The position numbers were made by a program, and so were the translations under genes. Under the pieces are notes generated by a model, which saw only the letters and a program-made list of their open reading frames with translations, was not told where the DNA came from and made no database searches. 64,000 nt of DNA, taken from the IMG/VR virus record IMGVR_UViG_3300044796_000657, positions 310,001 to 374,000 of that record. One strand, 5' to 3'. Positions 18,001-58,654 of the stretch are shown one piece after another (position 1 is the first letter of the stretch; each line of letters begins with the position of its first letter).

Positions 18001-18600
18001 TTGATGTTAAAATATATTGGTTTTGGTGGACAATATCGTTCGGGAAAAGACGCTGCTTCTGATCATTTATATGCTCGTTTGAGTGGAAAATGGAAACGTG
18101 CCTCGTTGGGTCATGCCGTCAAAAAGATTTTCGCTGAACACTTTAACGTAAGTATGGAATTTATTGAGGAATGGAAAGTCAAAGAAGAAGTGCCGCCCGG
18201 ATTCAATTGCCCTTTGCGAGATGGGTTAATTAAAATTGGGGATGGCTGGCGGGACACCAAGGCTGATATTTGGATTAGAAAATTATTCGATAACAATAAA
18301 GATAATTTGATTATCTCAGATGTTCGTTATATTAATGAAGCTGAGCATGTTCGTAATAACAATGGTATTATGAATTTGGTTTGGCGACCGGGATATGAAA
18401 ACAAAAAACCATCACGATCAGAACAAGAATTGATGCAATTTGTCAAAAGGCTTCAAAAAGAGCCAAGCGGTCGTATTGATCATGAAAAATATCCTGACGT
18501 TCCTTTTGACTTCTGGTTAGTTAATGATGGAAATTATAGGGATTGGCTGGAAAAGGTTGATAACATCGTATTGCCATATGCTCTTAAAAGGTTAAGTTAA
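18001..18600 (+). CDS. Deoxynucleoside monophosphate kinase (T4 gp1-like)
   Basis: P-loop GQYRSGKD, LGHAVK, IISDVRYINE and NDG. Confidence 0.8.
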   Translation: MMLKYIGFGGQYRSGKDAASDHLYARLSGKWKRASLGHAVKKIFAEHFNVSMEFIEEWKVKEEVPPGFNCPLRDGLIKIGDGWRDTKADIWIRKLFDNNKDNLIISDVRYINEAEHVRNNNGIMNLVWRPGYENKKPSRSEQELMQFVKRLQKEPSGRIDHEKYPDVPFDFWLVNDGNYRDWLEKVDNIVLPYALKRLS

Positions 18601-19346
18601 TGCATTTCGTTATAAGAAACAAAGATTTTATTTTCACAGAAACCGTATTGCCGGGCGATGATGTTCTTACATCCAATGGCGGTAAGGTATTTCAAGATTA
18701 CATCCAAGAAACTAAAGTTTTATGTGGGCCTTACTCTGAATGTAAATTTCCACAAAGTTACTTCGGCAACATCCGACCTTGGGATTACGAGCGGATTTTA
18801 GAATACGGGGACTTCGCTGCCAATCAAAAGGTTTTAGAATGCGGTGGGCTTCATAGCTATTTCGCTATTGCCACTTCCCAAAAAGTTAATCATTACACTT
18901 GTACTGATAGTTTTTATTGGGCGACTCGTGACTATGCTCAAAATCCACAATTACAAAGTCCTCAAGAGTGGTGTAAGTATTTGATTGGTAAAGGTCGTGG
19001 CAAACTTCACGCCGAAGAAGCCGACTTGCAATCCATGAAGTATGCCAACGAACAATTTGATAGAGTTGTCTGTATCAGTGTGATTGAGCATGTACACGAA
19101 GATCGCAAGGGTATTCTGGAAATGATGAGGGTTCTTAAGCCGGGCGGTTTATTGCTTTTGACAACTGAATACAATCCCACTTGGTCTAAGCCTTACGCTG
19201 AAACAGACGGCAGTTATTATCGTGTATATGATCAAAGTGACTTGAGTAATCTTTTGGCTGGTCTTGATGTTGAAGTAATGCAAGCCCAAGGTGGGGATGT
19301 TCGTGACGGGCAATTTACTACTACGTTCATACGGATCAGAAAATGA
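18600..19346 (+). CDS. Class I SAM-dependent methyltransferase
   Basis: VLECGG, FDRVVCISVIEH and RVLKPGGLLLLT. Confidence 0.85.
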   Translation: MHFVIRNKDFIFTETVLPGDDVLTSNGGKVFQDYIQETKVLCGPYSECKFPQSYFGNIRPWDYERILEYGDFAANQKVLECGGLHSYFAIATSQKVNHYTCTDSFYWATRDYAQNPQLQSPQEWCKYLIGKGRGKLHAEEADLQSMKYANEQFDRVVCISVIEHVHEDRKGILEMMRVLKPGGLLLLTTEYNPTWSKPYAETDGSYYRVYDQSDLSNLLAGLDVEVMQAQGGDVRDGQFTTTFIRIRK

Positions 19347-20752
19347 ATGTATCTGACATCATTAATAAGTTCAAAATTCAAAATGCCAAAACGAGACTGA
19401 GAATAGCAGTTATTGGTGATACGCTCGTTGATGAATACCGTTACGGCCAAGTCAACCGGATTTCGCCCGAATTTCCCGTTCCGATATTAACTTCCGAGTC
19501 AGACGCCAAGGAATCTTGTCCCGGTGGCGCTGCGAATGTATGCCATCAAATGACACACATGAACGCCGAAGTCTTTCTCGTAGGCTTTGTGGACAATGTC
19601 ACACGTAAATTGTACGGTCAGCAAACCTTCAATATTGACTACTGCGTTGATTTGCCAAGCGGCTTTGTACCAATCAAAGTTCGATTTTATGAAGGCGACT
19701 TTCCTCTCCTGCGATGGGATATTGAAAGTCCTAACTATGGCGAAAAAGATTTAAGTGAATTGAGACGAAAAATTCTCATTAATTTTGAATCTCTCATCAA
19801 AGAGGGATTGAGTGCGGTCATTATTAGTGATTATAATAAAGGCATCTTTGACGAAGCTACCGCTCGTTCTCTCATGCAATTATGTACTTATTACCGCATT
19901 CCTACTATCGTTGATCCCAAGAAACCACCAGTGAGCAAATGGTTCGGGGCTACAGTCATTAAGCCAAATGCGGCTGAAGCCAAGACGCTAACTGGTGAAT
20001 CTACTATTTCATCTCAATTGAGTAAATTATGTGAAAATGCTCATACGAGTATGATCACCCAAGGCGGCGACGGTGTTATTTGCCAAATTGGAAAAGAAAT
20101 TTTTGAATACATGTCCCCCGTACCACGATCTAAGGAGGTGAACAGTGTTATCGGGGCGGGGGACTGTTTTATAGCAATGTTAACTCTTGGGATGTCGCAC
20201 GGTATGACAACTCAAGAAGCTGTAGCATTGGCATTTGAAGCCGGTGCTGTTTACGTTAAAGCAAGACATAATAAACCAATTCATCTTAATGAAATACTCG
20301 CAAGAGTTGATGTTGAAGGCTCTCGTATCGTCAAAGCCGAAGAGTTAAACTTTAACAAAAACGAACGTATTGTTTTCACAAATGGTTGTTTTGACGTTAT
20401 TCATGCTGGTCACTTGGATACTTTGAAATTTGCCAAATGTCAAGGTGATCGATTGATTGTCGGTGTTAATTCGGATGCTTCTGTCAAGCGACTTAAGGGT
20501 GATAAGCGACCCATTTATGGACAAGATGAACGTGCTAGATTTTTAGCGTCAATGTATTTCGTAGATCATGTTGTGATTTTTGATGAAGATACACCAGCCG
20601 AATTGATTAATAAAATTCAGCCACACATTGTTGTTAAGGGCGGCGATTACTCTATTACGGATGTTGTTGCCGGTAATGCCAAAGTTGTTTTGTCGCCTCT
20701 CAGAAAAGGATACTCTTCAACTAATACAATTAATAAACTATCTGACGACTAA
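19343..20752 (+). CDS. hldE: Bifunctional heptose-7-phosphate kinase / heptose-1-phosphate adenylyltransferase
   Basis: PfkB half: GDTLVDEY, RISPEFPVP, GGAANV, SDYNKG and GAGD. C-terminal half: FTNGCFDVIHAGH, GVNSD, EDTP and VKGGDY. Confidence 0.93.
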   Translation: MNVSDIINKFKIQNAKTRLRIAVIGDTLVDEYRYGQVNRISPEFPVPILTSESDAKESCPGGAANVCHQMTHMNAEVFLVGFVDNVTRKLYGQQTFNIDYCVDLPSGFVPIKVRFYEGDFPLLRWDIESPNYGEKDLSELRRKILINFESLIKEGLSAVIISDYNKGIFDEATARSLMQLCTYYRIPTIVDPKKPPVSKWFGATVIKPNAAEAKTLTGESTISSQLSKLCENAHTSMITQGGDGVICQIGKEIFEYMSPVPRSKEVNSVIGAGDCFIAMLTLGMSHGMTTQEAVALAFEAGAVYVKARHNKPIHLNEILARVDVEGSRIVKAEELNFNKNERIVFTNGCFDVIHAGHLDTLKFAKCQGDRLIVGVNSDASVKRLKGDKRPIYGQDERARFLASMYFVDHVVIFDEDTPAELINKIQPHIVVKGGDYSITDVVAGNAKVVLSPLRKGYSSTNTINKLSDD

Positions 20753-33604: not shown

Positions 33605-33790
33605 ATGGCTAAAAAGACTCAAACCAAACAAGAGCAAATTTCGCAAGAAGAGCAGTATATCGCATTCCTTCAAAAGCGATTAGCTTCTGAGCATTACAAG
33701 GAAGTTACTTCAAAGGAAGACTACGCCAAGGAAAAGGCAAAGTATGAAAAGGCAAAGTTCAAATTGAAGATGTTGAAGGAACAGCGTTAA
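33605..33790 (+). CDS. Small basic hypothetical protein
   Basis: 61-aa ORF directly downstream of pncA. Confidence 0.6.
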   Translation: MAKKTQTKQEQISQEEQYIAFLQKRLASEHYKEVTSKEDYAKEKAKYEKAKFKLKMLKEQR

Positions 33791-46884: not shown

Positions 46885-47226
46885 ATGGGTGGCATGACAA
46901 GAAGTCCCGAATCGTGGTGGGAGTATTTTAAATCCCTTTTTAATATCAAAAATTATTATATCGATGGCACCGTTACGGTATGTGCTGGTTTCCATCAAAT
47001 TGAAATTCCTACGGTTACTAGCAATCCATGTTCTGTTTTTCTTAGCATCGAAGAGCCAGATAGCGCAACGACAACTTGTGTAGGCGATCTCAATTGGGCT
47101 ACTGCTAAGGTTCAACTCAACGGCTTCACTTTATACGCCAACATCAAATCTAACACTTGTACTATCAAATACGTTATTCAATATGACTGCGATAATTCTA
47201 ATCCTCAAAGCCCCATTGGTATATGA
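46885..47226 (+). CDS. Hypothetical beta-rich protein
   Basis: 113-aa ORF coupled to the downstream gene. Confidence 0.5.
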   Translation: MGGMTRSPESWWEYFKSLFNIKNYYIDGTVTVCAGFHQIEIPTVTSNPCSVFLSIEEPDSATTTCVGDLNWATAKVQLNGFTLYANIKSNTCTIKYVIQYDCDNSNPQSPIGI

Positions 47227-48212: not shown

Positions 48213-49473
48213 TCGGCATAACGTAATTACTGCTGTCTCTGAAGTTCCATTCAATTCCAATGGCCAAAGTGTAGTTCGAATCCACATTAACAAGGGTATG
48301 GATCTGAACCAAATCGTGGGGCGACTCTTGAGTACTAAACCAAAAAAACAGATAAAAGATTTGAAGGTAGCAGCAATATGCAATTGGGGCGATGCCTGCG
48401 GTATCGCCACTTACAGTAAATTTTTGTTCGATGAAATCAAGAAGAAGGTAGCTGATCTTCATGTATTTTCCGAAATCATACTCGAAGAACTGCCAGAAGA
48501 GGCTAATGTAACACGCTGTTGGAAGCGTGGTCAAAATCCATCAAAGCTTCTGGAGCAACTCAAAAAATACGATCCGGATTTTGTCATTATCCAGCACGAA
48601 TTTGGCATTTTTCCAAAAGCGGGATATTTCTTACAATTGCTTCAAGGACTTGAACAATATCCTTATGTGTTAACTTTGCACTCTGTATATGAACATCTTG
48701 ACAAAGCAGTATGTACTTCGGCTATTAAACACATTGTCGTCCATACCGAAGAAGGCAAAGAGGTTCTTAAGAAGACTGGGAATAATAACGATATTTTTGT
48801 AGTGCCTCACGGATGTGTTAGCATTCCTCCAGCAGAACGCATAGAATTATGGAATATTTTTCAAACCCCCTACGCTATCGTGCAATTCGGATTTGGTTTT
48901 TATTACAAAGGCGTTGATACGATTTTGGAAGCTATTGCTATCCTCAAAAAAACCAACTACGAAAAATACAAAGAACTCTTCTACTGCTATCTTTGCAGCG
49001 AGAATCCCCATGCCAATGCCATCCATACAAACTATTACAACTTTTTGATGGACAAGGTGAAAGAGTTGGATATTTCGGAGAACGTTGCCATTATTCGCAA
49101 GTTCCAAACCGAGCAGACAATTAACCATTACTTACGAACAGCTAAACTCGCAATCTTCCCATATCGTAGCGATCCGAACAATGTTGTTTATGGTGCTTCC
49201 GGTGCCAGTCGTATTGCTATGGCCAATGGTATTCCTGTTATTGTCGGCAAGAACCATCAGTTTGATGATTTGGAAGGTGTTTTGCCAAGAGCCGGTACAC
49301 CACAAGAATTGGCTAATGAAATTGACAAGATTTTCTCTAACGACAAACACCGCAAAGCAGTTATTGATCGTTCGTTAAAGTATATCGAAAATACGACTTG
49401 GAGCAAATGTGCCGATAAGTATTTGGATCTTTACGAAAAAGTATTACCCACCAACATCTTCGCCAAAATTTGA
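48196..49473 (+). CDS. GT4 glycosyltransferase
   Basis: CGIATYS, IQHEFG, TLHSV, PHG, FGFGFYYKG, FPY, ASGASRIAMANGIPVI. Confidence 0.85.
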   Translation: MYVSFDRHNVITAVSEVPFNSNGQSVVRIHINKGMDLNQIVGRLLSTKPKKQIKDLKVAAICNWGDACGIATYSKFLFDEIKKKVADLHVFSEIILEELPEEANVTRCWKRGQNPSKLLEQLKKYDPDFVIIQHEFGIFPKAGYFLQLLQGLEQYPYVLTLHSVYEHLDKAVCTSAIKHIVVHTEEGKEVLKKTGNNNDIFVVPHGCVSIPPAERIELWNIFQTPYAIVQFGFGFYYKGVDTILEAIAILKKTNYEKYKELFYCYLCSENPHANAIHTNYYNFLMDKVKELDISENVAIIRKFQTEQTINHYLRTAKLAIFPYRSDPNNVVYGASGASRIAMANGIPVIVGKNHQFDDLEGVLPRAGTPQELANEIDKIFSNDKHRKAVIDRSLKYIENTTWSKCADKYLDLYEKVLPTNIFAKI

Positions 49474-49689
49474 TAATAATTCCGTTGGACTATCAAAGTC
49501 CGGTATGATGAATTGAGTGCTCTCAACAGGGTCAATCTTCTTGAGAGCTATCGGACTATGCGGTGTTGCTCCGATGCTCAATGAACCATCTTGATTCAAA
49601 GTGATCGTTAAATTCAAGTTAACCGTTATTTCGCCTTGAACGGTTTGAACTCTCTCAGTGATAATTTGTGATTTGATGACCTGAACCAT
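49444..49689 (-). CDS. Hypothetical late protein
   Basis: GTAAATA upstream at 49696-49702. Confidence 0.55.
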   Translation of the reverse strand: MVQVIKSQIITERVQTVQGEITVNLNLTITLNQDGSLSIGATPHSPIALKKIDPVESTQFIIPDFDSPTELLSNFGEDVGG

Positions 49690-49698: not shown

Positions 49699-50658
49699 TT
49701 ACTTAGCAGTAGGCCATTTTACCATTATATCATCAAGCGATTGAAGAATTTCCTTCGCTGTCAATTCTGTAATACAAGGTTTTGATATTTGAGTATGATG
49801 ACATTTGTGACATTCACCCCAATTATAACACGGCCCACAATCCCATCCTTCATCACGATGTTTCTGAATTAAGTTCCACTTCTCATAATACTTGCCATAT
49901 ACCTTACCATCGGCCCATGAGAAAATTCCGACCATTGGAATTCCTAGACCACCAGCAATATGAAATGCGGCGCTGTCTACACTTATGACATAATCAGCAG
50001 CTCCGACCAATGCCATGAATTGTTTGTTATTTTTGCCGTGTAGCACTTTTCCATCAAAACCGGGAATGGCCCTTGAGTGAATTCCATAGTAGCTTAATCC
50101 CCGCTCTTGTAAACCTTTGCAGACTTGATCAATTTGCTCAACAGTTAAGTTTTTGCTGGAAATGGCCGATATGGGAGCGAAGCAAACTTTGGCACCTTGC
50201 GTTAGTTCTTTTGCTTCGGCTAACTCAGGTTCGCTAATTTTCATATGCATATTATGCCGAGTTAATTCTAATCCGCACCAATTGGCCCAAATATCGCTTC
50301 GGTGTGGTGCGGAATACGGAGAGGCTATGGCTTCAATTCTACCGCATATAGTTGTTGTGTCGTAATGAATAATCAATTTACTCATGTCGTAGTTGTTAAA
50401 GTCAACGACTTCGTCTACGAATGGATGTCCTTCAATTAGGGACATAAATTGTGGTGGACAACCGAATATAACTTTGATGTCTGGATTCAATAATTTGAAA
50501 TCTTCAAAAATCATCCTATGCATGAGGATGTCACCAATGCCACCGGTTCCTCGCATAATGAATACGGTTTGTCGTCTATCATAATAATCTCTAAGAGACC
50601 ATCGTTTCTTCATTGGGGGAATTCGATGGAGTCCAGAAGCAAGTCGTAATGTTTTCAT
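49699..50658 (-). CDS. GT9 (ADP-heptose-dependent heptosyltransferase-like) glycosyltransferase
   Basis: GGIGDILM, GHPFVDEV, ISVDSAAFHIAGGLGIPMVGIF and a C-terminal CGPC..C..C..PC cluster. Confidence 0.85.
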   Translation of the reverse strand: MKTLRLASGLHRIPPMKKRWSLRDYYDRRQTVFIMRGTGGIGDILMHRMIFEDFKLLNPDIKVIFGCPPQFMSLIEGHPFVDEVVDFNNYDMSKLIIHYDTTTICGRIEAIASPYSAPHRSDIWANWCGLELTRHNMHMKISEPELAEAKELTQGAKVCFAPISAISSKNLTVEQIDQVCKGLQERGLSYYGIHSRAIPGFDGKVLHGKNNKQFMALVGAADYVISVDSAAFHIAGGLGIPMVGIFSWADGKVYGKYYEKWNLIQKHRDEGWDCGPCYNWGECHKCHHTQISKPCITELTAKEILQSLDDIMVKWPTAK

Positions 50659-50672: not shown

Positions 50673-51302
50673 ATGTCGTACACGAATTACTTAAAAATAA
50701 AAGATAAGGTCTGTATTTGTTCTGAAGGCCACAACCCGGAATACCTTATACAGCTTCGAATATTATTGCCAACCCTAACCAAAGAGTTTCCGGAAATTGA
50801 TTTTACATTTGCCTGCCGAGCAGAAAATGTTCATTATATTCGTGGGGCTATTCCTATGGAAATTTACAATCAAACTAAAGGGGACTACGCATTCTCATAC
50901 GAAATCATTTATGATGCTCACTTCAAAGAGCATCCAATAGTCAGTATGTTAAACAATTCTAATATCACTCCAATTAAGATTAAGTCTTCTAGCCCCCGTG
51001 GACATATCGCCTACATATCAGCGATAGGCGACTTTCCTAATTCTAATTTGACAGATCAACAAATCAAAAAAGCATGTTCTTTTGCTGCGAATAAAGGATT
51101 CAAAACCAAAATCATTCAAGACAAATTAACTTTGAATGAAATTCAGAGGATGGTCATAGGGGCTGCGTTCGTTATCGGAACATCAAATGAGTTATTCTAT
51201 GAGGCTGTAGCAGCAGAAGCTCCAACTGCCTTGATTCCAACAGGCCCACAAGCCGAAGACATTTACCGAATGCTCGTACAATCGCCAAATGTTTTACCAT
51301 AA
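50673..51302 (+). CDS. Degenerate GT9-like protein
   Basis: Weak GT-B C-terminal pattern AAFVIGTSNELFYEAVAAEAPT. Confidence 0.45.
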   Translation: MSYTNYLKIKDKVCICSEGHNPEYLIQLRILLPTLTKEFPEIDFTFACRAENVHYIRGAIPMEIYNQTKGDYAFSYEIIYDAHFKEHPIVSMLNNSNITPIKIKSSSPRGHIAYISAIGDFPNSNLTDQQIKKACSFAANKGFKTKIIQDKLTLNEIQRMVIGAAFVIGTSNELFYEAVAAEAPTALIPTGPQAEDIYRMLVQSPNVLP

Positions 51303-51372: not shown

Positions 51373-51954
51373 ATGAGTGTTTTCCGTGTTAATTTAGATC
51401 AAGGTGTTGGCCGTACGGCTGGTGGTTATCTTGATCCTTCGAAATCTGGTGGCTACAGCATTCAGCGTACTATTTACGCCCCTGGCCCAAACAAAATCAA
51501 TCGCAAACTCGTTGACGGCAGCACCTTTACTGACGTAAACTACTGGAAGCGTTTTTCAAGTTCAGTTCTTGCTCCTGAGCAAGCCTTCATTGAAGTTGTT
51601 ACCGATGACGGTAGCGTTTGGAGCGATTACAGCGCCGACAACAGCTTCCCTCGTTCATATCACGTAATCATTGCCGACAACTCAGCTTATGCTGCTAACG
51701 TTGTTGACATTTTGGGCGACAATGGCTCAGCAGCCGTGTTCACCCAAATCACCGTAACCGCTTCTGGCTCAGCCCCAACATTCCGCTTCAACGGTTTGTC
51801 AACGGCTACTTTGACAATCGCTGGTGGTGTTACCCAAGTGTTTGATAAGGGCGACCTTGTCATCAGCAAGATTGAAATCAACAACACTCAATCTTCACAC
51901 GCAGCCGCAACTGCCGACATCTTTGTTTCAATCAAATCTGTCGCCAATAGCTAA
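51373..51954 (+). CDS. Probable abundant virion structural protein
   Basis: CTAAATA at 51327, AGGAG Shine-Dalgarno, biased codon use and its own terminator. Confidence 0.6.
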   Translation: MSVFRVNLDQGVGRTAGGYLDPSKSGGYSIQRTIYAPGPNKINRKLVDGSTFTDVNYWKRFSSSVLAPEQAFIEVVTDDGSVWSDYSADNSFPRSYHVIIADNSAYAANVVDILGDNGSAAVFTQITVTASGSAPTFRFNGLSTATLTIAGGVTQVFDKGDLVISKIEINNTQSSHAAATADIFVSIKSVANS

Positions 51955-51966: not shown

Positions 51967-51998
51967 AAAAAAAAGCCCCGCAAAGCGGGGCTTTTTTT
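51967..51998 (+). terminator. Intrinsic terminator
   Basis: A8-GCCCCGC-AAA-GCGGGGC-T7. Confidence 0.85.
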
Positions 51999-52018: not shown

Positions 52019-52270
52019 ATGCTAGGATTCAAATTGTGGATAGAAGCGAAAGCCGCTCCTCTGATTATCAGTAGACGCAATGAATATGACGATTTTCCGT
52101 ACATCGTTGTTGCGTTCCCTAGCGGTGCCCGTTGGAAATATATTTTCCCTAATCAGCACACGATGGAAGAATATTTGTATCGATACAGTCGGAACGTTGG
52201 CAGATTAGTTTCCAAGATTAAAGACGACGATACTGTTAAACAAGAGCAATTACCTCTTCCACAGAGTTAA
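52019..52270 (+). CDS. Small protein with a capsid-targeting-like N-terminus
   Basis: N-terminus MLGFKLWIEA; CTAAATA at 52008-52014. Confidence 0.65.
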   Translation: MLGFKLWIEAKAAPLIISRRNEYDDFPYIVVAFPSGARWKYIFPNQHTMEEYLYRYSRNVGRLVSKIKDDDTVKQEQLPLPQS

Positions 52271-52975
52271 GTCTTTGCCTGTGATCTTTTCTAATTCTTC
52301 GGTATGCGGCAGATAATAATCAAGCCACTTCTTTCTTTGTTCAGGCGTTGGCTTTTGGGCGTTAAATTTCTTATCATGTTCGTGATAACTGAACTTGAAC
52401 CAGTCTTTATAGCTATCTGGCACAAAAGACTCATCTACACCTAAAAACTTCCAAACTTCTTTCAGCACTTTTACGGGTTGTGATTCAATATCATCGTACC
52501 AAACAATGTGAATTTGCTCTTTTGGAAATAGTGCGTACCACTGCTTCAACCAACGTGAGTATATGCTTCTCTCTCTTACCCGCCAGAATTCAAAAGAATC
52601 CATGAAGGTTTTGTTTTTATCAAATCTTCCAGCATTTGTGGCGTGTTTCCAATTAGAAAAAGCACGTTCTAATGGGTGTCTGAATGAAACTATTAACTTA
52701 GATTGCGGTGAATACTCTTTGATCAGGTGCATGGCTTCGTAGTGATGAAAATAATCCGGTGTAAACTCACCGGTTTTTTGTTCATCTGTTGCCCGACCCA
52801 ATTGTTTCATATACACAGACATTGATCGTTTAACGGCATTGTTAAAGAAATGCATTTCTTTGACTTTGGGGGAATAGAGTTGCGGATGGCTCTTCATTTC
52901 ACGCCATAGCCAACTCGTACCGCATTTGACGCAGCCGATACCAATCCAGTCTGGTAATCTCATAAAAGTTCTCAC
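52250..52975 (-). CDS. PAPS-dependent sulfotransferase
   Basis: 5'-PSB loop IGIGCVKCGTSWL, KEMHFF, GEFTPDY and the 3'-PB motif FRHPLERAFS. Confidence 0.9.
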   Translation of the reverse strand: MRTFMRLPDWIGIGCVKCGTSWLWREMKSHPQLYSPKVKEMHFFNNAVKRSMSVYMKQLGRATDEQKTGEFTPDYFHHYEAMHLIKEYSPQSKLIVSFRHPLERAFSNWKHATNAGRFDKNKTFMDSFEFWRVRERSIYSRWLKQWYALFPKEQIHIVWYDDIESQPVKVLKEVWKFLGVDESFVPDSYKDWFKFSYHEHDKKFNAQKPTPEQRKKWLDYYLPHTEELEKITGKDLTLWKR

Positions 52976-52990: not shown

Positions 52991-54844
52991 ATGAAAATAA
53001 TGTTTTTGTCAGATCGCAAAGACGATTTACTGGAAACTCTATATGAATATTTTTCCAAGATGTATCCGTGCGAATATGGCATGAATACCACCGAAGCAGA
53101 TTTATTCGTCGCAAATTGCATAACTAATTTTCCGAATAAGACGATTTACTATGCGACTGATCCAAGTGATTATTTGTCCGACATCAGTACTCGGCGATTC
53201 AAAATAGGGTTTTTTCAAAAAACTAGGAGCATATTATGCCCATCTTTGTATCTCGCACAAACTTTTTATCGCAGGTTCAAAATACCTTGTGAAATACAAT
53301 ATCCACATTATTTGACAAAAGAAACATCACCTCAAAACATAATTTGTCATCCCAAGTTCGCATCTCAACACTCTATTGATGTTAATGAATTGTCACATGA
53401 AAACTTAAAATTGTTAGATGGCAACTTATCTCATGCTAAATTATATATTTCAAATGATGGGCCAATTGATGGTTCCCTTATAGAAGCATCGGCAAGAGGG
53501 GTTCCGGTTATTGCTCCGAATGATGTTTGGGTGCAAGAATTTTTAATTAACGGCGATCAGACTTTTCGATGGGGAACAACAGAGTGGATCGCAGCCACTA
53601 AAAAATGCTTGCGTAATATTGGAAGCAAAGTGCCGAGTGGTAAATATTCAAACATGTCTACATTACATGACAAAATTCAAAAGGCATTAGAAAAGAAGCC
53701 TACCGTTCTGCTTGATTTTCAACCAAAACCAGTCAAGCCCCCGCAAGTTTTTGGCAGACGACCAAATCGCACTACGAGAGTAGAACCACGTCGACCAATT
53801 ATGTTGCCTGAAATATCAGACAGAACAATTTACATCAGCGGCAGTTGTATCGGCATATCGGGATACGACAATTTGGTTTATGAAACAATTCGTGGGTTCA
53901 AATCTATTGGTGCTGACGTTCGCATCAATGCCAACAATCAAATTAATTATAATGTTTGTCCGGTATGGTTTCAAGATATTCACGCAGCCAAACCGGCCAA
54001 TGCGTGGGAAATTATCATTACCCCACCGTGTAATTTGAATTTTATCACACCGGGAAAGCGATCTGTTGTTTTGACAATGTGGGAAACGGATTATCTGGAA
54101 CCCGAATGGGTGAAGATGTTGAATAATGCCCATATGGTATGTGTACCGAGTCAGTGGGCTGTTGAGTGCTTCAAGAAGTGTGGTGTCACGGTTCCTATTG
54201 CTTGTGTTCCTCTCGGATATGATCCACTCATATTCAATCCTTTGGGTGAATTTCCAAAATTGTGTACCTTTGGTACAGCGGCAGCACTGACCGCTGGCGG
54301 TTTGCGTAAAAACACAAGATATATCATAGACTTATTCCGCAAAGCATTTCCTGAAGAAGCAGACGTAAGACTTAAAGTTAAAGTAAGTCCAGCTTGCCCA
54401 TTGCCGGAATTTCAGGATTCAAGAGTTGAAATCATTCGGGAGATGTTGCCCCCTGCTAAATTGGCTGATTGGTATCGATCCATTACTGCTTTTGTTAACG
54501 CTTCGTACGCTGAAGGGTTTGGACTACACCTAATAGAGTCAATGGCATGTGGTCGGCCATTGATTTCCACATACTATAGTGCCGTAACTGAATATTTTGA
54601 TGATAGTGTTGGTTGGACGGTAGATCATGAAATTATCAAAGCGGCGGGTGGTGCTTACTCTGGACATTGGGGAAAGCCGATAGAACAATCTATCATCAAC
54701 AACATGAGACAGGTTTATAGCGATAAAGAAGCGGTTAAAAATAAAGGTGAGGCGGCTTATCTGAAATCACGGGATTTCACTTGGAAGAAATTCGGTCATA
54801 AGTTAATAGAGGCTATTGGGAAAAATGGAGTGGTGAATTTATGA
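52991..54844 (+). CDS. Two-domain GT4-type glycosyltransferase
   Basis: C-terminal domain WETD, VPSQW, LRKN, AEGFGLHLIESMACGRP; degenerate N-terminal GT domain (EASARGVPVI); TTAAATA 4 nt upstream. Confidence 0.85.
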   Translation: MKIMFLSDRKDDLLETLYEYFSKMYPCEYGMNTTEADLFVANCITNFPNKTIYYATDPSDYLSDISTRRFKIGFFQKTRSILCPSLYLAQTFYRRFKIPCEIQYPHYLTKETSPQNIICHPKFASQHSIDVNELSHENLKLLDGNLSHAKLYISNDGPIDGSLIEASARGVPVIAPNDVWVQEFLINGDQTFRWGTTEWIAATKKCLRNIGSKVPSGKYSNMSTLHDKIQKALEKKPTVLLDFQPKPVKPPQVFGRRPNRTTRVEPRRPIMLPEISDRTIYISGSCIGISGYDNLVYETIRGFKSIGADVRINANNQINYNVCPVWFQDIHAAKPANAWEIIITPPCNLNFITPGKRSVVLTMWETDYLEPEWVKMLNNAHMVCVPSQWAVECFKKCGVTVPIACVPLGYDPLIFNPLGEFPKLCTFGTAAALTAGGLRKNTRYIIDLFRKAFPEEADVRLKVKVSPACPLPEFQDSRVEIIREMLPPAKLADWYRSITAFVNASYAEGFGLHLIESMACGRPLISTYYSAVTEYFDDSVGWTVDHEIIKAAGGAYSGHWGKPIEQSIINNMRQVYSDKEAVKNKGEAAYLKSRDFTWKKFGHKLIEAIGKNGVVNL

Positions 54845-55866
54845 TTGTTGGAATCTCAACACCGACATTAGTAGGGGGCGATGCCGTCGGTAATGATGTT
54901 ATGGGGATGTACTATGCATTATTATATCATGGTCACAAAGTGAGACTGTTTGCCAACCATTATGACGTTAATGCCACAGTAGAACCATTGACAAGGCTTG
55001 ATAACAACATGGATGTTTTGATCTATCATCATTCCATCAATTGCCCATTGGGTATTCAGGCACTCCAAAAAGGTAAATATCAGAAAGTTATTAAGTACCA
55101 CAATATTACGCCACCTGAATTTTTCATTGGTGATGAAAAAACTAAAAAGGAGTGCGAACTTGGACTAGAGCAGAACCACGAAATCGTTAAACATAACGTA
55201 TGGTCTGACTCTCATTACAACGCCAGCCAGTTGAAGGCTATCAAACCCGATTTAGAATATTCGGTAATTCCCCCATTTACACAAGCCGAAGATTTAGGGG
55301 CAGTAGAAGCAAATTTTCAAGCAGCAATACCATATGACGATTGGTTGACAAACATCATTATGGTTGGACGAGTTGCCGCCAACAAAGATGTTATGATGGG
55401 GATAAGAGCTTTTGAAGAGTATTTAAAAATCAATCGCTTTGCTCGCCTCATCATCATTGGCGATAAAAGTACCGATTATGCCAATAGTGTCATTGATTAT
55501 GCCAAAAAGTTTGGCGATAAAGTTGTTATGACTGGTCGGGTTACACTTTCAACATTGAAAGCGTTCTATTTGATAGCAGATGCTTTATTGATTACAAGTC
55601 TCCATGAGGGTTTTTGTGTACCGCTCATTGAAGCAATGTCTCTGAATGTTCCGGTGGTAGTTAATGATAAGTGTGCTTTGCCTGAAACTGCCGGTGATGC
55701 TGCCATTGTCATAAAAGGCAATGATCCCAAATCTTTTGCAGATGGATTACATCAAACGATTGATAGTATCACATATGTCAAAGCCGGAAAAGATCATTAC
55801 CGAGAAAAATTTCATCGCTCTGCCGTAGCTAAAACTTTTATCACGGCTTTTGAAGCAGTTCGGTAA
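54841..55866 (+). CDS. GT4 glycosyltransferase
   Basis: GDAVGND, YHNITP, VGRVAANK and SLHEGFCVPLIEAM. Confidence 0.88.
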   Translation: MIVGISTPTLVGGDAVGNDVMGMYYALLYHGHKVRLFANHYDVNATVEPLTRLDNNMDVLIYHHSINCPLGIQALQKGKYQKVIKYHNITPPEFFIGDEKTKKECELGLEQNHEIVKHNVWSDSHYNASQLKAIKPDLEYSVIPPFTQAEDLGAVEANFQAAIPYDDWLTNIIMVGRVAANKDVMMGIRAFEEYLKINRFARLIIIGDKSTDYANSVIDYAKKFGDKVVMTGRVTLSTLKAFYLIADALLITSLHEGFCVPLIEAMSLNVPVVVNDKCALPETAGDAAIVIKGNDPKSFADGLHQTIDSITYVKAGKDHYREKFHRSAVAKTFITAFEAVR

Positions 55867-56746
55867 TACTTTCAGCTAATGCTAGTTTGAGATTCGTGTA
55901 ATAAATGTGTCTGTATTTCTTCTCAAAGTAATTAGTGGCTCTTTCAGGTTTGAAGCCTTTGATTTTATTTTTGAGTGGAACCAAATGCATGACATTGTCA
56001 CAAATGTCAAAAAAGTTAATGGGGTGGTGTTTGTGCCATACGCCGATACTAGGTGTGGTTGTTGTTCCGGCAACGTGTAACGGGCCAGAATCTATGCCAA
56101 CGTAAAGTTTGGCCCTACCAATCAATGCTGCCAATGTACCAGCACTTGAATTTTTAACGCCCCCCCAAATTGGATTTTTGGCGTCGGGATTGAATATGGT
56201 TTTGTTGTCTGGAAGTGGTGACTCTTTTTTCCAATCTAAGATCACTGGTGTACAATTCATTCCTTTGACACACTTACAGATAAACCTTGCGTCGGCATGT
56301 GTGAGGCTCTTGGCTGTTTTGAGTGTCTTAGCCAAATAGTGAATTAGTACAAATGGTTTATCTGGCAGAGTTTTGATGAAATCGTCAGCTAATTGATGCT
56401 CATGAGGCTGGATTGTAATATCGTAGCCTTCATAGAGCTTTTCAATTGGCTTAACTTTTAATACGTGCTTCAAAAATTGCGTAGGCTTAGTGGAAGGTAA
56501 ATTACTGCAACAACTCTTTGGAATTGGCCAAAGAATATCTAAAATTTCGTCATAAGAACGACTTTCATATTGATCAATTTTTCTACGAAAGATGTTTCCG
56601 ACTTTGCCTAGAAAGTAAGATTCCTTTCCGGAGCCGACTTCAATATCCAGATTCCAATGAGGAAAGTAATGTGCAATATGCCGCATCACAATTGAAAATT
56701 GGGCATTGTCGCCCAAACCGTGCCTCATCTTAAACAAAACTCGCAT
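55841..56746 (-). CDS. GT9-like glycosyltransferase
   Basis: HGLGD and LYVGIDSGPLHVAGTTTTPSIGVW. Confidence 0.8.
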   Translation of the reverse strand: MRVLFKMRHGLGDNAQFSIVMRHIAHYFPHWNLDIEVGSGKESYFLGKVGNIFRRKIDQYESRSYDEILDILWPIPKSCCSNLPSTKPTQFLKHVLKVKPIEKLYEGYDITIQPHEHQLADDFIKTLPDKPFVLIHYLAKTLKTAKSLTHADARFICKCVKGMNCTPVILDWKKESPLPDNKTIFNPDAKNPIWGGVKNSSAGTLAALIGRAKLYVGIDSGPLHVAGTTTTPSIGVWHKHHPINFFDICDNVMHLVPLKNKIKGFKPERATNYFEKKYRHIYYTNLKLALAESITELLQKP

Positions 56747-56762: not shown

Positions 56763-57749
56763 TTAAATCATATTCGGCGAACCACCGAGAAAATGTCTAA
56801 CTCTTTGCCCTCTCATAAGACCGTCATATATCTCCTTATTGATCATATCCTGTAGCTGATATGGAGTTCCTCGCCAATCTTCGTGCGGGCCAATGAAATC
56901 ACTATCTTTCATTGGTGGCAACGCAAGCAATGGCGGACGACTCAATCCAAGGGTTTTTTCGCCAAATGCTAAATCATCGATGTGTTCACCGAGTATTGAA
57001 ATTTCTGCCGTAAACTTTTCCCGCATCCGTGGTTTACTATTAAAGATTTTCGGTTGCGGCAAATTGGAAAGAGGATCGGCATCAACACCCAATAACCGAC
57101 ATCGTAATATATTCCATTCGTCCAACGGCATTTCGTTGACGTTGATACGGTAATCATTTGTGAAAAGGTCTAATGTTGGTGCAACATCGGGAGCACAATT
57201 ATGAATTAGATCGTAAGTTAAACAAATCGCTACTCCCATCCAAAAGTTGGGATTGTTCAACGGAAACACTTTTTGGTTACGAGTGATCTTATCGAGTATG
57301 GTTGGCGGGCTGCGGTGATACGTTTTAACATATCGACATTGCCCGTGCAATAAATTCCGATAGTGATGACTTAGATCACGGATACTATGAAATTGGTGTT
57401 GGGCGAGATGTTCACTTTTGCCAAAGATTGCCCAAGGAATTACGCTGACGCTACGACTTCCCGCAACAAAAAGTGTGCGATATGACAAAAAGCCGTTAAC
57501 TCTATCAAACATATCACATACCGTTTCACCCCATTCACACCAATGCTGCCGACGGCGGAAGCGGGAATCTTCGGGGTACGTATCGATATGCGCAAAGTAT
57601 TTTTTCAAGAAAAAGGTTTTCTTGAGAGCGCCTTTCGGTATAGCGAACTCCAGAACGTGATATTCGGTATCATCGACTACTTCGATGCTTGATGAGACAT
57701 TGCCGTTATGGAAGGCTTCTTTTGGTGTCATAATGTTGCTATTTTGCAA
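56763..57749 (-). CDS. Hypothetical protein
   Basis: 328-aa ORF with no recognised motif. Confidence 0.55.
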   Translation of the reverse strand: MQNSNIMTPKEAFHNGNVSSSIEVVDDTEYHVLEFAIPKGALKKTFFLKKYFAHIDTYPEDSRFRRRQHWCEWGETVCDMFDRVNGFLSYRTLFVAGSRSVSVIPWAIFGKSEHLAQHQFHSIRDLSHHYRNLLHGQCRYVKTYHRSPPTILDKITRNQKVFPLNNPNFWMGVAICLTYDLIHNCAPDVAPTLDLFTNDYRINVNEMPLDEWNILRCRLLGVDADPLSNLPQPKIFNSKPRMREKFTAEISILGEHIDDLAFGEKTLGLSRPPLLALPPMKDSDFIGPHEDWRGTPYQLQDMINKEIYDGLMRGQRVRHFLGGSPNMI

Positions 57750-57769
57750 ATTTAAGGTATACTAAACCC

Positions 57770-58654
57770 ATGAGCAAATTTCTAATTACCGGTGCTAGTG
57801 GTTTCATAGGATCAAATCTAGTAAATAACTTACTAGACATGGGGCATGAAGTCACATGCATCGGAAGAATAGACGAACAACCAGTTCGATGTCTATCATA
57901 CACTTTCCATGACATTAATTGGAAGAGCATTGGGCAGATTGATGGTATATTTCATCAAGCGGCAATCACCAATACGCTTCATCCCAACAAAACAGATTTT
58001 AACTTAATAAACTTTGAATACACGAAGTCACTGTTTGAGGCGGCTAAGCATAATGTCAAATCTATTGTGTACGCAAGTTCCTGTGGCGTTTACGGCGATG
58101 TTCCCACCCCATTTAGGGAAGATGGCCCCACCAAGCCACTCAATCTGTACAGTCAATCTAAATTGGATCTTGATCAATGGGCAATGAAATGGTCTCTTGC
58201 AAATCGTGTTAAGGTCGTTGGCCTCAGATATAGCAACGTGTACGGTGCTGGCGAATCACACAAGGGCAAGAGTGCCAGTATGATTTACCAATTGGCCAAA
58301 AGTATCAGTCGGGGAATTCGTCCTAGATTATTTGAACATGGCGAACAAAAGAGAGATTTCGTTTACATTGAAGATGTCATGACAGCAAATCGTTTGGCTT
58401 TAAGTGCTCCGTCCGGTGTCTACAATGTTGGCTCTGGATCAGCTACCTCGTTCAATGATATTGTTAATCATCTAAATGCCACCTTAAGCACAGATGTTAA
58501 ACCTGAATACTTCCCCAATCCACATCAATCAGTTTACCAAAATTCTACATTGTGCGATTTGAGTTTATCAAAAGATCGTTTGTGCTATTTCCCTCTGTAC
58601 GACATTGCTTCTGGCATCAAAGCATATCACCAATCGGGAAAGCTAGTCTCTTAA
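57770..58654 (+). CDS. hldD: ADP-L-glycero-D-manno-heptose 6-epimerase-like extended SDR
   Basis: GASGFIG, FHQAA, YASSCGVYG, YSQSK, RYSNVYGAGESHKGKSAS, RDFVYIED. Confidence 0.82.
   Translation: MSKFLITGASGFIGSNLVNNLLDMGHEVTCIGRIDEQPVRCLSYTFHDINWKSIGQIDGIFHQAAITNTLHPNKTDFNLINFEYTKSLFEAAKHNVKSIVYASSCGVYGDVPTPFREDGPTKPLNLYSQSKLDLDQWAMKWSLANRVKVVGLRYSNVYGAGESHKGKSASMIYQLAKSISRGIRPRLFEHGEQKRDFVYIEDVMTANRLALSAPSGVYNVGSGSATSFNDIVNHLNATLSTDVKPEYFPNPHQSVYQNSTLCDLSLSKDRLCYFPLYDIASGIKAYHQSGKLVS

What the first reader, a model, noticed from the sequence alone, without database searches (positions are those of the whole stretch)
18600..58654. Phage ADP-heptose biosynthesis plus a glycan build-and-decorate toolkit interleaved with virion genes
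Seen in sequence: full HldE coupled to a SAM methyltransferase; an HldD-like epimerase; two clear GT9 genes and one degenerate GT9; three GT4 genes; a GT-A-like gene; a pyruvyltransferase; and a sulfotransferase. Most lie within 47-59 kb, among probable virion genes (51373, 58643), and at least one (52991) has a late-promoter box. Established: HldE and HldD make ADP-L-glycero-D-manno-heptose, the donor for GT9 heptosyltransferases. TibC/Aah-type enzymes use it to heptosylate Ser residues of proteins and carry a Cys4 iron finger, and 49699-50658 ends in a CGPC..C..C..C cluster. Inference: the phage builds a heptose-containing, pyruvylated, sulfated and possibly methylated glycan, either on its own virion proteins (poly-Ser proteins are candidate acceptors) or on host LPS to mask receptors. 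GmhA and GmhB are not in the window.
Basis: partly seen in the sequence, partly recalled or inferred. Interest (0 to 1): 0.8.

Follow-up and report, generated by a model that had tools for sequence, protein, structure and literature searches.

The report
Huge-phage heptose glycan-building gene set
A very large bacteriophage carries working-looking genes to make ADP-heptose and about ten enzymes to build and decorate a sugar chain; two of these enzymes and a small structural-looking protein are conserved in hundreds of related huge phages, so the sugar is probably put on the phage's own proteins, although host LPS remains a serious alternative.

Summary
The gene inventory is mostly real. Confirmed by Pfam/NCBIfam:
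- full-length HldE overlapping a SAM methyltransferase
- an HldD-type epimerase
- two GT9 genes plus a shortened GT9 paralogue
- three GT4 genes
- a pyruvyltransferase and a sulfotransferase

No GT-A gene was found. The "late-promoter box" is a weak TTTAAATA. The two "virion genes" are virus-only families with no proven virion role.

The window is part of a huge phage contig of at least 430 kb with a T4-type capsid protein and terminase. Its nearest public relative is LR756511.1 (595 kb).

The main new point is that the toolkit has two layers.
- **Clade-wide core:** GT9-A (49699-50658, invariant Cys4 cluster), GT4-A (48196-49473) and a 193-aa jelly-roll protein (51373-51954). Each has about 500-630 homologues, many on contigs of 200-670 kb. 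GT9-A and the 193-aa gene are neighbours in all five relatives examined.
- **Lineage-variable:** sulfotransferase, two GT4, GT9-B, HldD and the methyltransferase.

All the enzymes are soluble, and no flippase, polymerase or ligase is present. I favour cytoplasmic glycosylation of phage protein(s) (0.4) over LPS-core remodelling (0.3) or DNA glycosylation (0.08). This is a new variant of a known kind. The acceptor is not shown.

The parts
18001..18600 (+). dNMP-kinase-like gene, first gene of a tightly packed three-gene unit with the methyltransferase and HldE
   Evidence: PF04275 (E 1.5e-7) and PF21448 DNMK (E 1.7e-5). Its end overlaps the methyltransferase start by 1 nt. LR756511.1 has a 42% identical homologue 7 kb from its own HldE.
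18600..19346 (+). Class I SAM-dependent methyltransferase with unknown substrate
   Evidence: Methyltransf_11/23/25 hits. It overlaps HldE by 4 nt. It is absent from LR756511.1. Relative L022 carries two methyltransferases inside its glycan island.
19343..20752 (+). HldE, a bifunctional heptose-7-P kinase and heptose-1-P adenylyltransferase
   Evidence: NF008454 at E 1e-86 over the full length, below the equivalog cut-off. It is 35% identical to E. coli HldE with the motifs kept. Homologues of 40-44% identity occur in LR756511.1, L003 and L004.
46885..47226 (+). 113-aa Cys/Thr-rich protein that travels with GT4-A
   Evidence: Two tandem homologues sit next to GT4-A in LR756511.1, and one in L022. 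It has no Pfam or PHROG hit.
47223..48212 (+). Polysaccharide pyruvyltransferase (CsaB/WcaK type)
   Evidence: PF04230 at E 7e-21 and TIGR03609 at E 2.5e-20, the latter below its cut-off. It is 53% identical in L022 at the same position. It is 33% identical in LR756511.1, at a different position.
48196..49473 (+). GT4-A, a clade-core GT4 glycosyltransferase
   Evidence: PF00534 and PF13692. It has 534 homologues at E <= 0.001; the 120 listed are 47-86% identical (one 100% partial), on contigs up to 670 kb. It is 56% identical in LR756511.1, where it lies between the capsid and terminase genes.
49444..49689 (-). 81-aa protein between GT9-A and the actin-like gene
   Evidence: A weak homologue sits at the same position in L019 and L022. 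Similar small ORFs occur in L017 and L018.
49699..50658 (-). GT9-A, a clade-core GT9 enzyme with a conserved C-terminal Cys4 cluster
   Evidence: PF01075. It has 493 homologues at E <= 0.001; the 120 listed are 42-75% identical. D43, K169 and D228 are invariant and match WaaC D13, K192 and D261. C274, C277, C283 and C295 are invariant. The AF2 model has pLDDT 91 and its best folds are WaaF, 3TOV, WaaC and TibC.
50673..51302 (+). 209-aa shortened GT9-like paralogue, probably non-catalytic
   Evidence: hhalign against the GT9-A family gives probability 53% and E 1e-4, and the GGxGD motif is not kept. It is conserved next to the 193-aa gene in L017, L018, L019 and L022.
51373..51954 (+). 193-aa jelly-roll protein, the candidate acceptor or structural partner of GT9-A
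   Evidence: It has 633 homologues at E <= 0.001; the 120 listed are 45-79% identical. It is within one gene of GT9-A in 5 of 5 relatives. The AF2 model (pLDDT 85) has an N-terminal strand, a variable floppy linker and a beta-sandwich. Its best matches are Ena fibre subunits, cupins and plant-virus coats, all at low TM. It is 20% Ser+Thr. S2, S29 and the C-terminal S193 are invariant.
51968..51998 (.). Strong bidirectional intrinsic terminator just after the 193-aa gene
   Evidence: 14-bp stem with 7 GC pairs, flanked by an A-run and a T-run.
52250..52975 (-). Sulfotransferase
   Evidence: PF00685 (E 1e-17) and PF13469. It is 53% identical in L022 at the same position and absent from LR756511.1.
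52991..54844 (+). GT4-B, 617 aa, with an unknown N-terminal 350 aa and a C-terminal GT4 domain
   Evidence: PF13692 and PF00534 on residues 440-547, and PHROG 2170 glycosyltransferase. The N-terminal half has no Pfam hit. It is 45% identical in L022.
54841..55866 (+). GT4-C
   Evidence: PF00534 at E 4e-23. It is 40% identical in L022.
55841..56746 (-). GT9-B, a second GT9 enzyme without the Cys4 cluster
   Evidence: PF01075 at E 5e-8. hhalign against the GT9-A family gives probability 80%. GLGD and DSGPLH motifs are present. No homologue was found in LR756511.1 or in other IMG/VR contigs.
56763..57749 (-). 328-aa protein of unknown function inside the island
   Evidence: No Pfam, NCBIfam or PHROG hit, and the Atlas model is poor.
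57770..58654 (+). HldD-type ADP-glycero-manno-heptose 6-epimerase
   Evidence: TIGR02197 at E 4e-69, just below its cut-off. It is 34% identical to E. coli HldD with the signature motifs kept.
58643..59497 (-). 284-aa virus-only protein; a virion role is possible but not shown
   Evidence: The only family hit is PHROG 13135 (unknown function, E 2.7e-5). Atlas look-alikes are viral hypotheticals, with weak tube and baseplate resemblance at TM 0.4. LR756511.1 has two 27-29% identical paralogues.

Best explanation
**Proposed mechanism**

This is a virus-encoded cytoplasmic glycosylation system of a huge phage, and its most likely acceptor is one or more of the phage's own proteins.

1. *Sugar supply (shown by homology).* HldE phosphorylates and adenylylates heptose phosphate made by the host. 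Host GmhA and GmhB are needed, because neither is in the window. HldD converts part of the ADP-D,D-heptose to ADP-L,D-heptose.
2. *Core module (conservation shown, roles inferred).* This module is shared by the whole phage clade.
   - GT9-A is a GT9 heptosyltransferase with a conserved Cys4 metal-finger-like cluster.
   - It is possibly helped by its shortened paralogue (50673-51302).
   - It would put heptose on the neighbouring 193-aa jelly-roll protein.
   - GT4-A would act with, or on, the 113-aa protein.
3. *Variable set (inferred).* GT4-B, GT4-C, GT9-B, the pyruvyltransferase, the sulfotransferase and a methyltransferase would extend and decorate the chain, giving an acidic, strain-specific glycan.
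4. *Product (inferred).* The glycosylated protein ends up on the particle surface, as a decoration or a fibre. There the glycan would shield or stabilise the virion or mediate adsorption.
For: **Enzymes look functional.** HldE, HldD, GT9-A and GT9-B keep their catalytic and donor-binding motifs.

**Core status.**
- GT9-A, GT4-A and the 193-aa protein have 493, 534 and 633 homologues, many on contigs of 200-670 kb.
- The only record in the GenBank phage collection that carries GT9-A is the uncultured 595-kb phage LR756511.1.
- GT4-A is 56% identical to its LR756511.1 orthologue, against 41.6% for the large terminase.
- GT9-A is only 12-15% identical to bacterial WaaC and WaaF. This fits long evolution inside phages, not a recent host capture.

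**Conserved neighbourhood.**
- The order 209-aa, 193-aa, GT9-A, small ORF, actin-like gene is kept in L017, L018, L019 and L022. In L017, L018 and L019 large PKD-domain proteins lie upstream.
- In LR756511.1, GT4-A and the 113-aa genes lie between the capsid and terminase genes.

**The 193-aa protein looks structural.**
- It has a conserved N-terminal strand, a linker of variable length and a jelly-roll domain.
- It is Ser/Thr-rich with an invariant C-terminal Ser.
- A strong terminator follows it.

**No export machinery.** No enzyme has a membrane segment, and no flippase, polymerase, ligase or priming transferase is in the window.

**Variable sugar genes around a fixed core.** HldD is here, a GDP-mannose dehydratase in L022 and a UDP-glucose dehydrogenase in L017.

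**Precedents.**
- TibC heptosylates Ser of a protein and needs a Cys4 iron finger (PMC4358343).
- Mycobacteriophage capsid and tail-tube C-termini carry glycans (cited in PMC12619734).
- Mimivirus fibrils carry pyruvylated and methylated glycans (PMC8456856).
Against: - No direct evidence shows that the 193-aa, 113-aa or 284-aa proteins are virion components or are glycosylated. PHROGs, Pfam and the fold searches give no named structural family.
- The GT9-A fold matches LPS enzymes (WaaF, WaaC) at better E-values than TibC. It lacks TibC's N-terminal beta-barrel.
- LPS-core enzymes are also soluble or peripheral and need no phage-encoded flippase. The missing export genes therefore do not exclude LPS.
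- HldD makes the L,D-heptose that is typical of LPS inner cores.
- Only 64 kb of a genome of at least 430 kb was visible, so export or lipid-carrier genes could lie elsewhere.
- GT9-A is less conserved than the terminase against LR756511.1 (34% against 41.6%).
Confidence: 0.4

Rival explanations
1. Host envelope remodelling. The phage boosts ADP-heptose and uses its GT9 and GT4 enzymes, with pyruvyl and sulfate transfer, to alter the host LPS core or another host surface glycan during infection. The effect would be to mask receptors, block superinfection or prevent progeny from re-adsorbing to lysed cells.
For: - HldE, HldD and GT9 are the canonical LPS inner-core pathway, and the best folds for GT9-A are WaaF and WaaC.
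- Cyanomyophages such as P-SSM2, S-SSM7 and S-CAM1 carry split HldE genes, annotated there as carbohydrate kinase and heptose-phosphate adenylyltransferase.
- A heptosyltransferase in a wastewater huge phage has already been read as an LPS auxiliary gene (PMC10747093).
- LPS-core enzymes act on the cytoplasmic face, so no phage flippase is needed.
- GT9-B, HldD, the sulfotransferase and GT4-B/C are lineage-variable, like host-derived auxiliary genes.
Against: - GT9-A and GT4-A are clade-wide, strongly conserved, phage-specific families. They keep fixed neighbours that are virus-only proteins. This is unusual for host-interaction auxiliary genes.
- The conserved Cys4 insertion was not seen aligned in WaaC or 3TOV.
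- Host identity and LPS chemistry are unknown. There is only a tentative Planctomycetota hint.
Confidence: 0.3
2. Split function. The clade-core pair (GT9-A with the 193-aa protein, GT4-A with the 113-aa protein) glycosylates phage proteins. The variable genes (GT9-B, HldD, GT4-B/C, sulfotransferase) act on a host glycan. Alternatively, the whole set makes a free or cell-associated acidic polysaccharide.
For: - The two layers have clearly different conservation.
- The best NCBIfam match of the pyruvyltransferase is CsaB, which modifies a cell-wall polymer.
- A sulfatase and a cysteine dioxygenase elsewhere in the window point to a wider involvement with sulfur and sulfated glycans.
Against: - The variable genes are physically inserted around the core module, and they keep that position in L022. 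This argues for one pathway.
- No polymerase or exporter for a free polysaccharide was seen.
Confidence: 0.15
3. DNA hypermodification. The heptose, and possibly further sugars, are attached to a modified base in phage DNA to block restriction. This has been shown for phage clusters that make 5-heptosyl-hydroxymethylcytosine.
For: - Phage clusters are known that put mono- and di-heptose on 5hmC (bioRxiv 10.1101/2023.12.21.572611).
- HldE sits in a tight unit with a dNMP kinase.
- GT9-A lies close to primase, nuclease and helicase genes, and it has a Cys4 finger that could bind nucleic acid.
Against: - No homologue of T4 dCMP hydroxymethylase or beta-glucosyltransferase is in the window or in the complete LR756511.1 genome.
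- No TET/JBP, thymidylate-synthase or C5-methylase domain was found among the window ORFs scanned.
- Seven transferases plus pyruvyl and sulfate transfer go far beyond the mono- to trisaccharides known on DNA.
- The known DNA heptosyltransferase is T4-beta-GT-like, not GT9.
- ThyX-type and 5mYOX enzymes were not specifically searched for, and 85% of the genome was not visible.
Confidence: 0.08

Closest known systems
LPS inner-core heptose pathway (HldE, HldD, WaaC/WaaF/WaaQ; GT9)
   Same: The same enzyme families are present with the catalytic motifs kept. The GT9 fold and the donor-binding residues are conserved.
   Different: - GT9-A is only 12-15% identical to WaaC and WaaF, carries an extra conserved Cys4 cluster, and is a core gene of a phage clade.
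- GmhA, GmhB and Kdo transferases are not seen.
- The acceptor is unknown.
Bacterial autotransporter heptosyltransferases (TibC, AAH, BimC)
   Same: - Both have a GT9-like catalytic core that uses ADP-heptose.
- Both have a CxxC...C...C cluster inserted near the C-terminus. In TibC it binds iron and is needed for activity (PMC4358343).
- TibC is among the fold matches for GT9-A (TM 0.61-0.65) and has the lowest rmsd.
   Different: - GT9-A has no N-terminal beta-barrel.
- Its N-lobe is a normal Rossmann fold with helices.
- The Cys spacing differs: x2, x5, x11 here against x2, x15, x11 in TibC.
- A family profile does not find TibC by sequence.
- No autotransporter-like beta-helix substrate is present.
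Cyanomyophage surface-sugar gene islands (P-SSM2, S-SSM7, S-CAM1)
   Same: These are phage-encoded heptose kinase and adenylyltransferase genes with epimerases and transferases nearby, in T4-like phages.
   Different: - In those phages HldE is split into two genes, and the sets sit in variable islands.
- Here two of the transferases are clade-core and have fixed virus-only partners.
Virion glycosylation in mycobacteriophages and in giant viruses (chloroviruses, Mimivirus fibrils)
   Same: In both cases virus-encoded transferases build glycans on the virus's own structural proteins. Mimivirus glycans are pyruvylated and O-methylated (PMC8456856). Mycobacteriophage glycans sit at protein C-termini (cited in PMC12619734).
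   Different: - Those systems use different sugars and enzyme families, and heptose is not reported in them.
- Glycosylation is not demonstrated here.
Phage DNA glycan hypermodification clusters (5hmC plus heptose or Kdo)
   Same: These are phage-encoded nucleotide-heptose supply plus a GT-B transferase.
   Different: - They need a 5hmC-forming enzyme and a T4-beta-GT-like transferase, and neither was found here.
- Their glycans are much shorter.

Membership tests
HldE (bifunctional heptose kinase/adenylyltransferase) | Both domains in one chain: an N-terminal PfkB/ribokinase-type kinase and a C-terminal cytidylyltransferase-like domain | tested here: met
   PF00294 covers residues 59-306 and PF01467 covers 345-438. 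NF008454 is aligned over positions 10-471 of 475.
HldE (bifunctional heptose kinase/adenylyltransferase) | Score above NCBIfam's equivalog cut-off | tested here: not met
   The score is 291 bits against a cut-off of 521. The domain models also score below their cut-offs. This is a divergent member.
HldE (bifunctional heptose kinase/adenylyltransferase) | Catalytic motifs: the ribokinase GAGD anion hole and the nucleotidyltransferase HxGH | tested here: met
   PGGAANV, GAGD and TNGCFDxxHxGH are invariant in the alignment with E. coli HldE and two phage homologues.
HldD (ADP-glycero-manno-heptose 6-epimerase) | SDR fold with the GxxGxxG motif, the Ser-Tyr-Lys triad and the HldD signature RYxNVYGxxExHKG | tested here: met
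   It is 34% identical to E. coli HldD with all these motifs aligned. A 16-residue loop is missing. TIGR02197 scores 233 bits against a cut-off of 274.6.
GT9 heptosyltransferases | GT-B fold closest to WaaC and WaaF | tested here: met
   The AF2 model has pLDDT 91. The Foldseek top hits are 1psw, 3tov, 6dfe and 2h1h, with E from 3e-12 to 3e-9.
GT9 heptosyltransferases | Counterparts of WaaC D13, K192 and D261. That these are the key WaaC residues is from my own recall. | tested here: met
   GT9-A D43, K169 and D228 align to them and are invariant in 43 homologues. GT9-B has GLGD and DSGPLH motifs.
GT9 heptosyltransferases | Uses ADP-heptose as donor; LPS core as acceptor | not testable with these tools
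   This needs an enzyme assay.
BAHT family (TibC/AAH protein heptosyltransferases) | Four conserved Cys forming a metal finger inserted in the C-lobe | tested here: inconclusive
   Four invariant Cys lie 24-45 residues from the C-terminus, a position like TibC's. The spacing differs, and metal binding and 3D clustering could not be checked.
BAHT family (TibC/AAH protein heptosyltransferases) | N-terminal beta-barrel domain (TibC residues 1-97) | tested here: not met
   GT9-A is 319 aa, and the first Rossmann strand starts at residue 31.
BAHT family (TibC/AAH protein heptosyltransferases) | Detectable sequence relationship to TibC | tested here: not met
   A family-profile search of the PDB at E <= 10 finds 3TOV, WaaC and WaaF but not TibC. 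TibC appears only in the fold search.
GT4 glycosyltransferases | Glycos_transf_1-type C-terminal domain above the Pfam cut-off | tested here: met
   All three genes meet this. For GT4-B only residues 440-547 match.
Polysaccharide pyruvyltransferase (PF04230) | Domain match above the Pfam cut-off | tested here: met
   75.7 bits against a cut-off of 25.3. The CsaB and WcaK equivalog models score below their cut-offs.
Sulfotransferase (PF00685) | Domain match above the Pfam cut-off | tested here: met
   64.9 bits against a cut-off of 22. The PAPS source was not examined.
Phage virion protein (51373-51954 and 58643-59497) | Match to a known structural family, or presence in particles | tested here: inconclusive
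   - No structural family was found in Pfam or PHROGs.
- The 193-aa model has a jelly-roll domain that resembles Ena fibre subunits and virus coats only weakly.
- Proteomics was not possible.

The most novel reading that the evidence does not exclude
A whole clade of huge phages builds glycosylated surface fibrils or a glycan coat from a small jelly-roll protein. The 193-aa family would polymerise or dock through its conserved N-terminal strand, in the way Ena-type fibres do. A phage-specific Cys4-finger GT9 enzyme would O-heptosylate it, and lineage-specific enzymes would then extend the glycan into a pyruvylated, sulfated chain. This would be the first protein heptosylation system outside the bacterial autotransporters, and a phage counterpart of the Mimivirus glycosylated fibril layer.
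Probability: 0.15. Interest if true: 0.85.

Novelty: new variant of a known kind. Interest (0 to 1): 0.6.

Why it matters
Phage-encoded sugar genes are usually filed as auxiliary genes that tweak host LPS. Here two glycosyltransferases and a small virus-only protein are among the better-conserved genes of a large, environmentally widespread clade of huge phages, which suggests that glycosylation is part of the phage's own biology.

If the acceptor is a virion protein, several things follow:
- Self-made virion glycans would extend from mycobacteriophages and giant viruses to huge phages.
- Heptose, pyruvate and sulfate would be added to the known chemistry of viral glycans.
- Protein heptosylation would gain a second, independent family.

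Such a coat could affect adsorption, particle stability and recognition by grazers or immune systems. The conserved GT9-A and 193-aa pair is small and soluble, so it is directly testable by co-expression.

Tried and rejected
- **Close public phage:** megablast of 22 kb against GenBank phages found nothing. Only protein searches found LR756511.1.
- **Residue-level comparison with TibC:** a single-sequence PDB search with GT9-A found nothing, and GT9-B gave only a marginal 3TOV hit at E 0.74. The family profile did not reach TibC either. A residue-level alignment of the Cys cluster with TibC's iron finger was therefore not possible.
- **GT-A gene:** a Pfam search down to E = 1 on all unexplained ORFs found none.
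- **Virion annotation:** PHROG scans of 20 unexplained ORFs gave only glycosyltransferase, endonuclease VII and methyltransferase-related hits.
- **T4 late promoter:** TATAAATA is not enriched in the window.
- **GmhA and GmhB in the rest of this genome:**
  - Only about 10 kb around a match can be fetched.
  - A scan with the LR756511.1 GmhB-like protein found nothing.
  - This question stays open.
- **328-aa ORF (56763-57749):** no family was found and the model is poor.
- **DNA modification:** tblastn with T4 gp42, beta-GT and gp56 against the window and LR756511.1 was negative. This is a weak test, because TET and ThyX types were not covered.

Full report
**What the window is**

The window is part of IMG/VR contig IMGVR_UViG_3300044796_000657 (430,229 bp). 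It corresponds to about 310,001-374,000 of that contig. The same GT9 protein is also on record on a 614-kb contig.

The window encodes a T4-type major capsid protein (2144-3097) and a large terminase (22501-24165), alongside many replication and metabolic genes on both strands. No similar DNA exists in GenBank phages. By protein, the nearest record is the uncultured 595-kb phage LR756511.1, with terminase 41.6% identical and HldE 39.7% identical. I fetched that whole record for comparison.

**Checking the observation**

Profile searches confirm most of the list.

| Gene | Coordinates |
|---|---|
| SAM methyltransferase | 18600-19346 |
| HldE | 19343-20752 |
| Pyruvyltransferase | 47223-48212 |
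| GT4 | 48196-49473, 52991-54844, 54841-55866 |
| GT9 | 49699-50658, 55841-56746 |
| Sulfotransferase | 52250-52975 |
| HldD | 57770-58654 |

- HldE and HldD score below NCBIfam's equivalog cut-offs. They align end to end with the E. coli enzymes (35% and 34% identity) and keep all the signature motifs.
- The methyltransferase overlaps HldE by 4 nt and follows a dNMP-kinase-like gene with a 1-nt overlap, so the three form one unit.
A profile-profile comparison with the GT9-A family gives only 53% probability (E 1e-4), and the catalytic GGxGD motif is gone.
- No GT-A gene could be found.
- GmhA and GmhB are indeed absent from the window.
- The 'late-promoter box' before 52991 reads TTTAAATA. 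The T4 consensus is not enriched in the window. A shorter TAAATA lies upstream of 10 of 84 starts, 8 of them 6-16 nt from the start codon, against about 1.7 expected. Its meaning is unknown.
- The two 'probable virion genes' have no named family.

**Two layers of conservation**

Comparison with LR756511.1, with three more distant contigs L017-L019 and with the closer 69-kb contig L022 shows that the toolkit is not uniform.

*Clade-wide genes*
- GT9-A: 493 homologues at E <= 0.001; the 120 listed are 42-75% identical.
- GT4-A: 534 homologues at E <= 0.001; the 120 listed are 47-86% identical.
- The 193-aa protein at 51373-51954: 633 homologues at E <= 0.001; the 120 listed are 45-79% identical.
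- Many of these lie on contigs of 200-670 kb.
- In LR756511.1, GT4-A is the second most conserved of the shared proteins (56%, against 41.6% for the terminase).

*Conserved gene order*
- L017, L018 and L019 share one order: PKD-domain proteins, then proteins of about 620, 290 and 110 aa, further small ORFs, the 209-aa GT9-like protein, the 193-aa protein, GT9-A, a small ORF, an actin-like (Volactin) gene, and further on primase and PD-(D/E)XK nuclease.
- In LR756511.1, GT9-A and the 193-aa gene are adjacent. GT4-A sits with two copies of the 113-aa gene between the capsid and terminase genes.

*Variable genes*
- The sulfotransferase, GT4-B and GT4-C are shared only with L022, at 40-53% identity and in the same positions.
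- The methyltransferase, GT9-B, the 328-aa ORF and a true HldD were found in no relative.
- L022 instead carries two methyltransferases inside the island and a GDP-mannose 4,6-dehydratase at its edge.
- L017 has a UDP-glucose dehydrogenase nearby.

The picture is of a fixed core that different lineages surround with different sugar-supply and tailoring genes.

**GT9-A**

- The family alignment shows an invariant GGxGD, K169, D228 and H233. These align with WaaC D13, K192 and D261. The importance of those WaaC residues is from my own recall.
- Four Cys (274, 277, 283, 295) are invariant and lie just before the C-terminal helix.
- The AF2 model is confident (pLDDT 91).
- Foldseek ranks WaaF, the Veillonella GT9 and WaaC first, with E from 3e-12 to 3e-9. 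All TibC chains follow, with E about 6e-8, TM 0.61-0.65 and the lowest rmsd of 4.7 A.
- TibC's iron finger uses Cys339, 342, 358 and 370 of 406 residues. It is an insertion in the C-lobe and is required for activity (PMC4358343).
- GT9-A therefore shares the position and the CxxC...C...C character of that insertion. It lacks the N-terminal beta-barrel and shows no sequence-level link to TibC.
- I do not file it in the TibC family. It may nevertheless work in a similar way.
- GT9-B has the GT9 motifs but no Cys cluster.

**The 193-aa protein**

- The alignment shows a conserved start (MSVFxVxL), then a linker whose length varies by up to about 40 residues, then a well-conserved body that ends in an invariant Ser.
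- The model (pLDDT 85) has an N-terminal strand, a low-confidence linker and a jelly-roll sandwich.
- The best structural matches are Ena endospore-appendage subunits, PirA, cupins and plant-virus coat proteins. All cover only the roughly 100-residue sandwich and have modest TM.
- The protein has 20% Ser+Thr and no Cys.
- A strong bidirectional terminator follows it at 51968-51998.
- These features fit an abundant structural protein that docks or polymerises through its N-terminal strand, but that is inference.

**Where the glycan goes**

- None of the enzymes has a membrane segment.
- No flippase, polymerase, O-antigen ligase or priming transferase was found in the window. The chain must therefore be built in the cytoplasm directly on its acceptor.
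- That fits a protein acceptor. It equally fits the LPS core, which is assembled on lipid A at the cytoplasmic face.
- What tips the balance for me is the core status, the phage-specific divergence and the fixed virus-only neighbours of GT9-A and GT4-A. Host-surface auxiliary genes are usually sporadic.
- Against this, nothing shows that the candidate acceptors are in the particle. HldD makes the LPS-type L,D-heptose. And 85% of the genome was out of reach.
- DNA glycosylation deserves mention because phage clusters that heptosylate 5hmC are known.
  - No hydroxymethylase or T4-type DNA glucosyltransferase homologue is in the window or in the complete LR756511.1 genome.
  - The number of transferases, plus pyruvyl and sulfate transfer, points to a polysaccharide-like product.

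**Comparison with what is known**

- Phage HldE genes have long been annotated in cyanomyophages.
- A huge-phage heptosyltransferase has been read as an LPS auxiliary gene (PMC10747093).
- Glycosyltransferases and PfkB kinases are reported as widespread in huge phages (bioRxiv 10.64898/2026.10.24.761521).
- Four core glycosyltransferase groups of unknown role were noted in another large aquatic phage lineage (PMC12619734).
- Virion glycans made by the virus itself are established for mycobacteriophages and giant viruses, including pyruvylated and methylated Mimivirus glycans.
- The present case is a new variant. It has a conserved Cys4-finger GT9 paired with a jelly-roll protein, and it is embedded here in an unusually rich heptose, pyruvate and sulfate island.

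**Verdict**

- Probabilities by acceptor:
  - 0.4 for a phage-own protein
  - 0.3 for LPS or the host envelope
  - 0.15 for a split or other glycan target
  - 0.08 for DNA
  - the remaining 0.07 unassigned
- Interest is 0.6.

Noticed in passing
window 45786-46787 (-): An actin-like gene of the Volactin family (PF25216, E 1e-56). It is 55-67% identical in every relative examined and always lies one small ORF away from GT9-A (in this window and L022 the 113-aa, pyruvyltransferase and GT4-A genes are also inserted between them). It is one of the most conserved genes of this huge-phage clade.
   Followed up: partly
window 3953-7207 (+): Two tandem SPFH/Band-7 genes in a stretch with GC 0.49-0.54, against about 0.40 elsewhere. 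Tandem orthologues of 54-60% identity lie on high-GC contigs of Planctomycetota MAGs. This suggests gene transfer and gives a tentative host hint.
   Followed up: partly
window 8303-9472 (-) and 22060-22500 (-): A sulfatase (PF00884, E 3e-33) and a cysteine dioxygenase (PF05995, E 6e-14). Together with the sulfotransferase they give the phage a sulfur and sulfated-glycan theme.
   Followed up: no
window 15089-16285, 32997-33602, 33759-34286: A nicotinate phosphoribosyltransferase, an isochorismatase-type (nicotinamidase-like) protein and a NUDIX hydrolase. This is a possible NAD salvage set.
   Followed up: no
window 39043-41629 (-): A helicase-like gene (ResIII N-terminus, 519 aa) directly follows a 340-aa ORF with a LAGLIDADG domain, in the lowest-GC part of the window (0.35). 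A homing endonuclease or intein may have split a helicase.
   Followed up: no
window 1251-3097 (+): The capsid gene ORF (317 aa) matches only positions 139-354 of the 376-position Gp23 profile. LR756511.1 matches it in two separate pieces. The gene may be split, or its start may lie in the upstream ORF.
   Followed up: no
window 37499-37873 (-), 27709-28161 (+), 62327-63331 (-): An S-adenosylmethionine decarboxylase, a ferritin-like protein and a phiEco32-type COOH-NH2 ligase. These are further metabolic genes unrelated to the glycan set.
   Followed up: no
window 60623-60650 and 60811-60831 (+): Two strong terminator-like hairpins follow 59599-60615. That gene encodes a 338-aa protein with long acidic Gly/Asp-rich and Lys-rich stretches and no family hit.
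   Followed up: no
LR756511.1 about 101.9-111.6 kb (L008): The relative has a second sugar cluster. It holds a 322-aa protein with a GmhB-like HAD domain (E 2e-12 to E. coli GmhB), a cytidylyltransferase-like ORF and an SDR epimerase or dehydratase. No GmhA was found anywhere in that genome.
   Followed up: partly
L022 19716-20651 (-) and L017 4734-5219 (-): Small Gp23-like (capsid-fold) paralogues lie next to sugar-nucleotide genes in two relatives, a GDP-mannose dehydratase in one and a UDP-glucose dehydrogenase in the other. The matches are weak (E 0.001, or marked 'weak').
   Followed up: no
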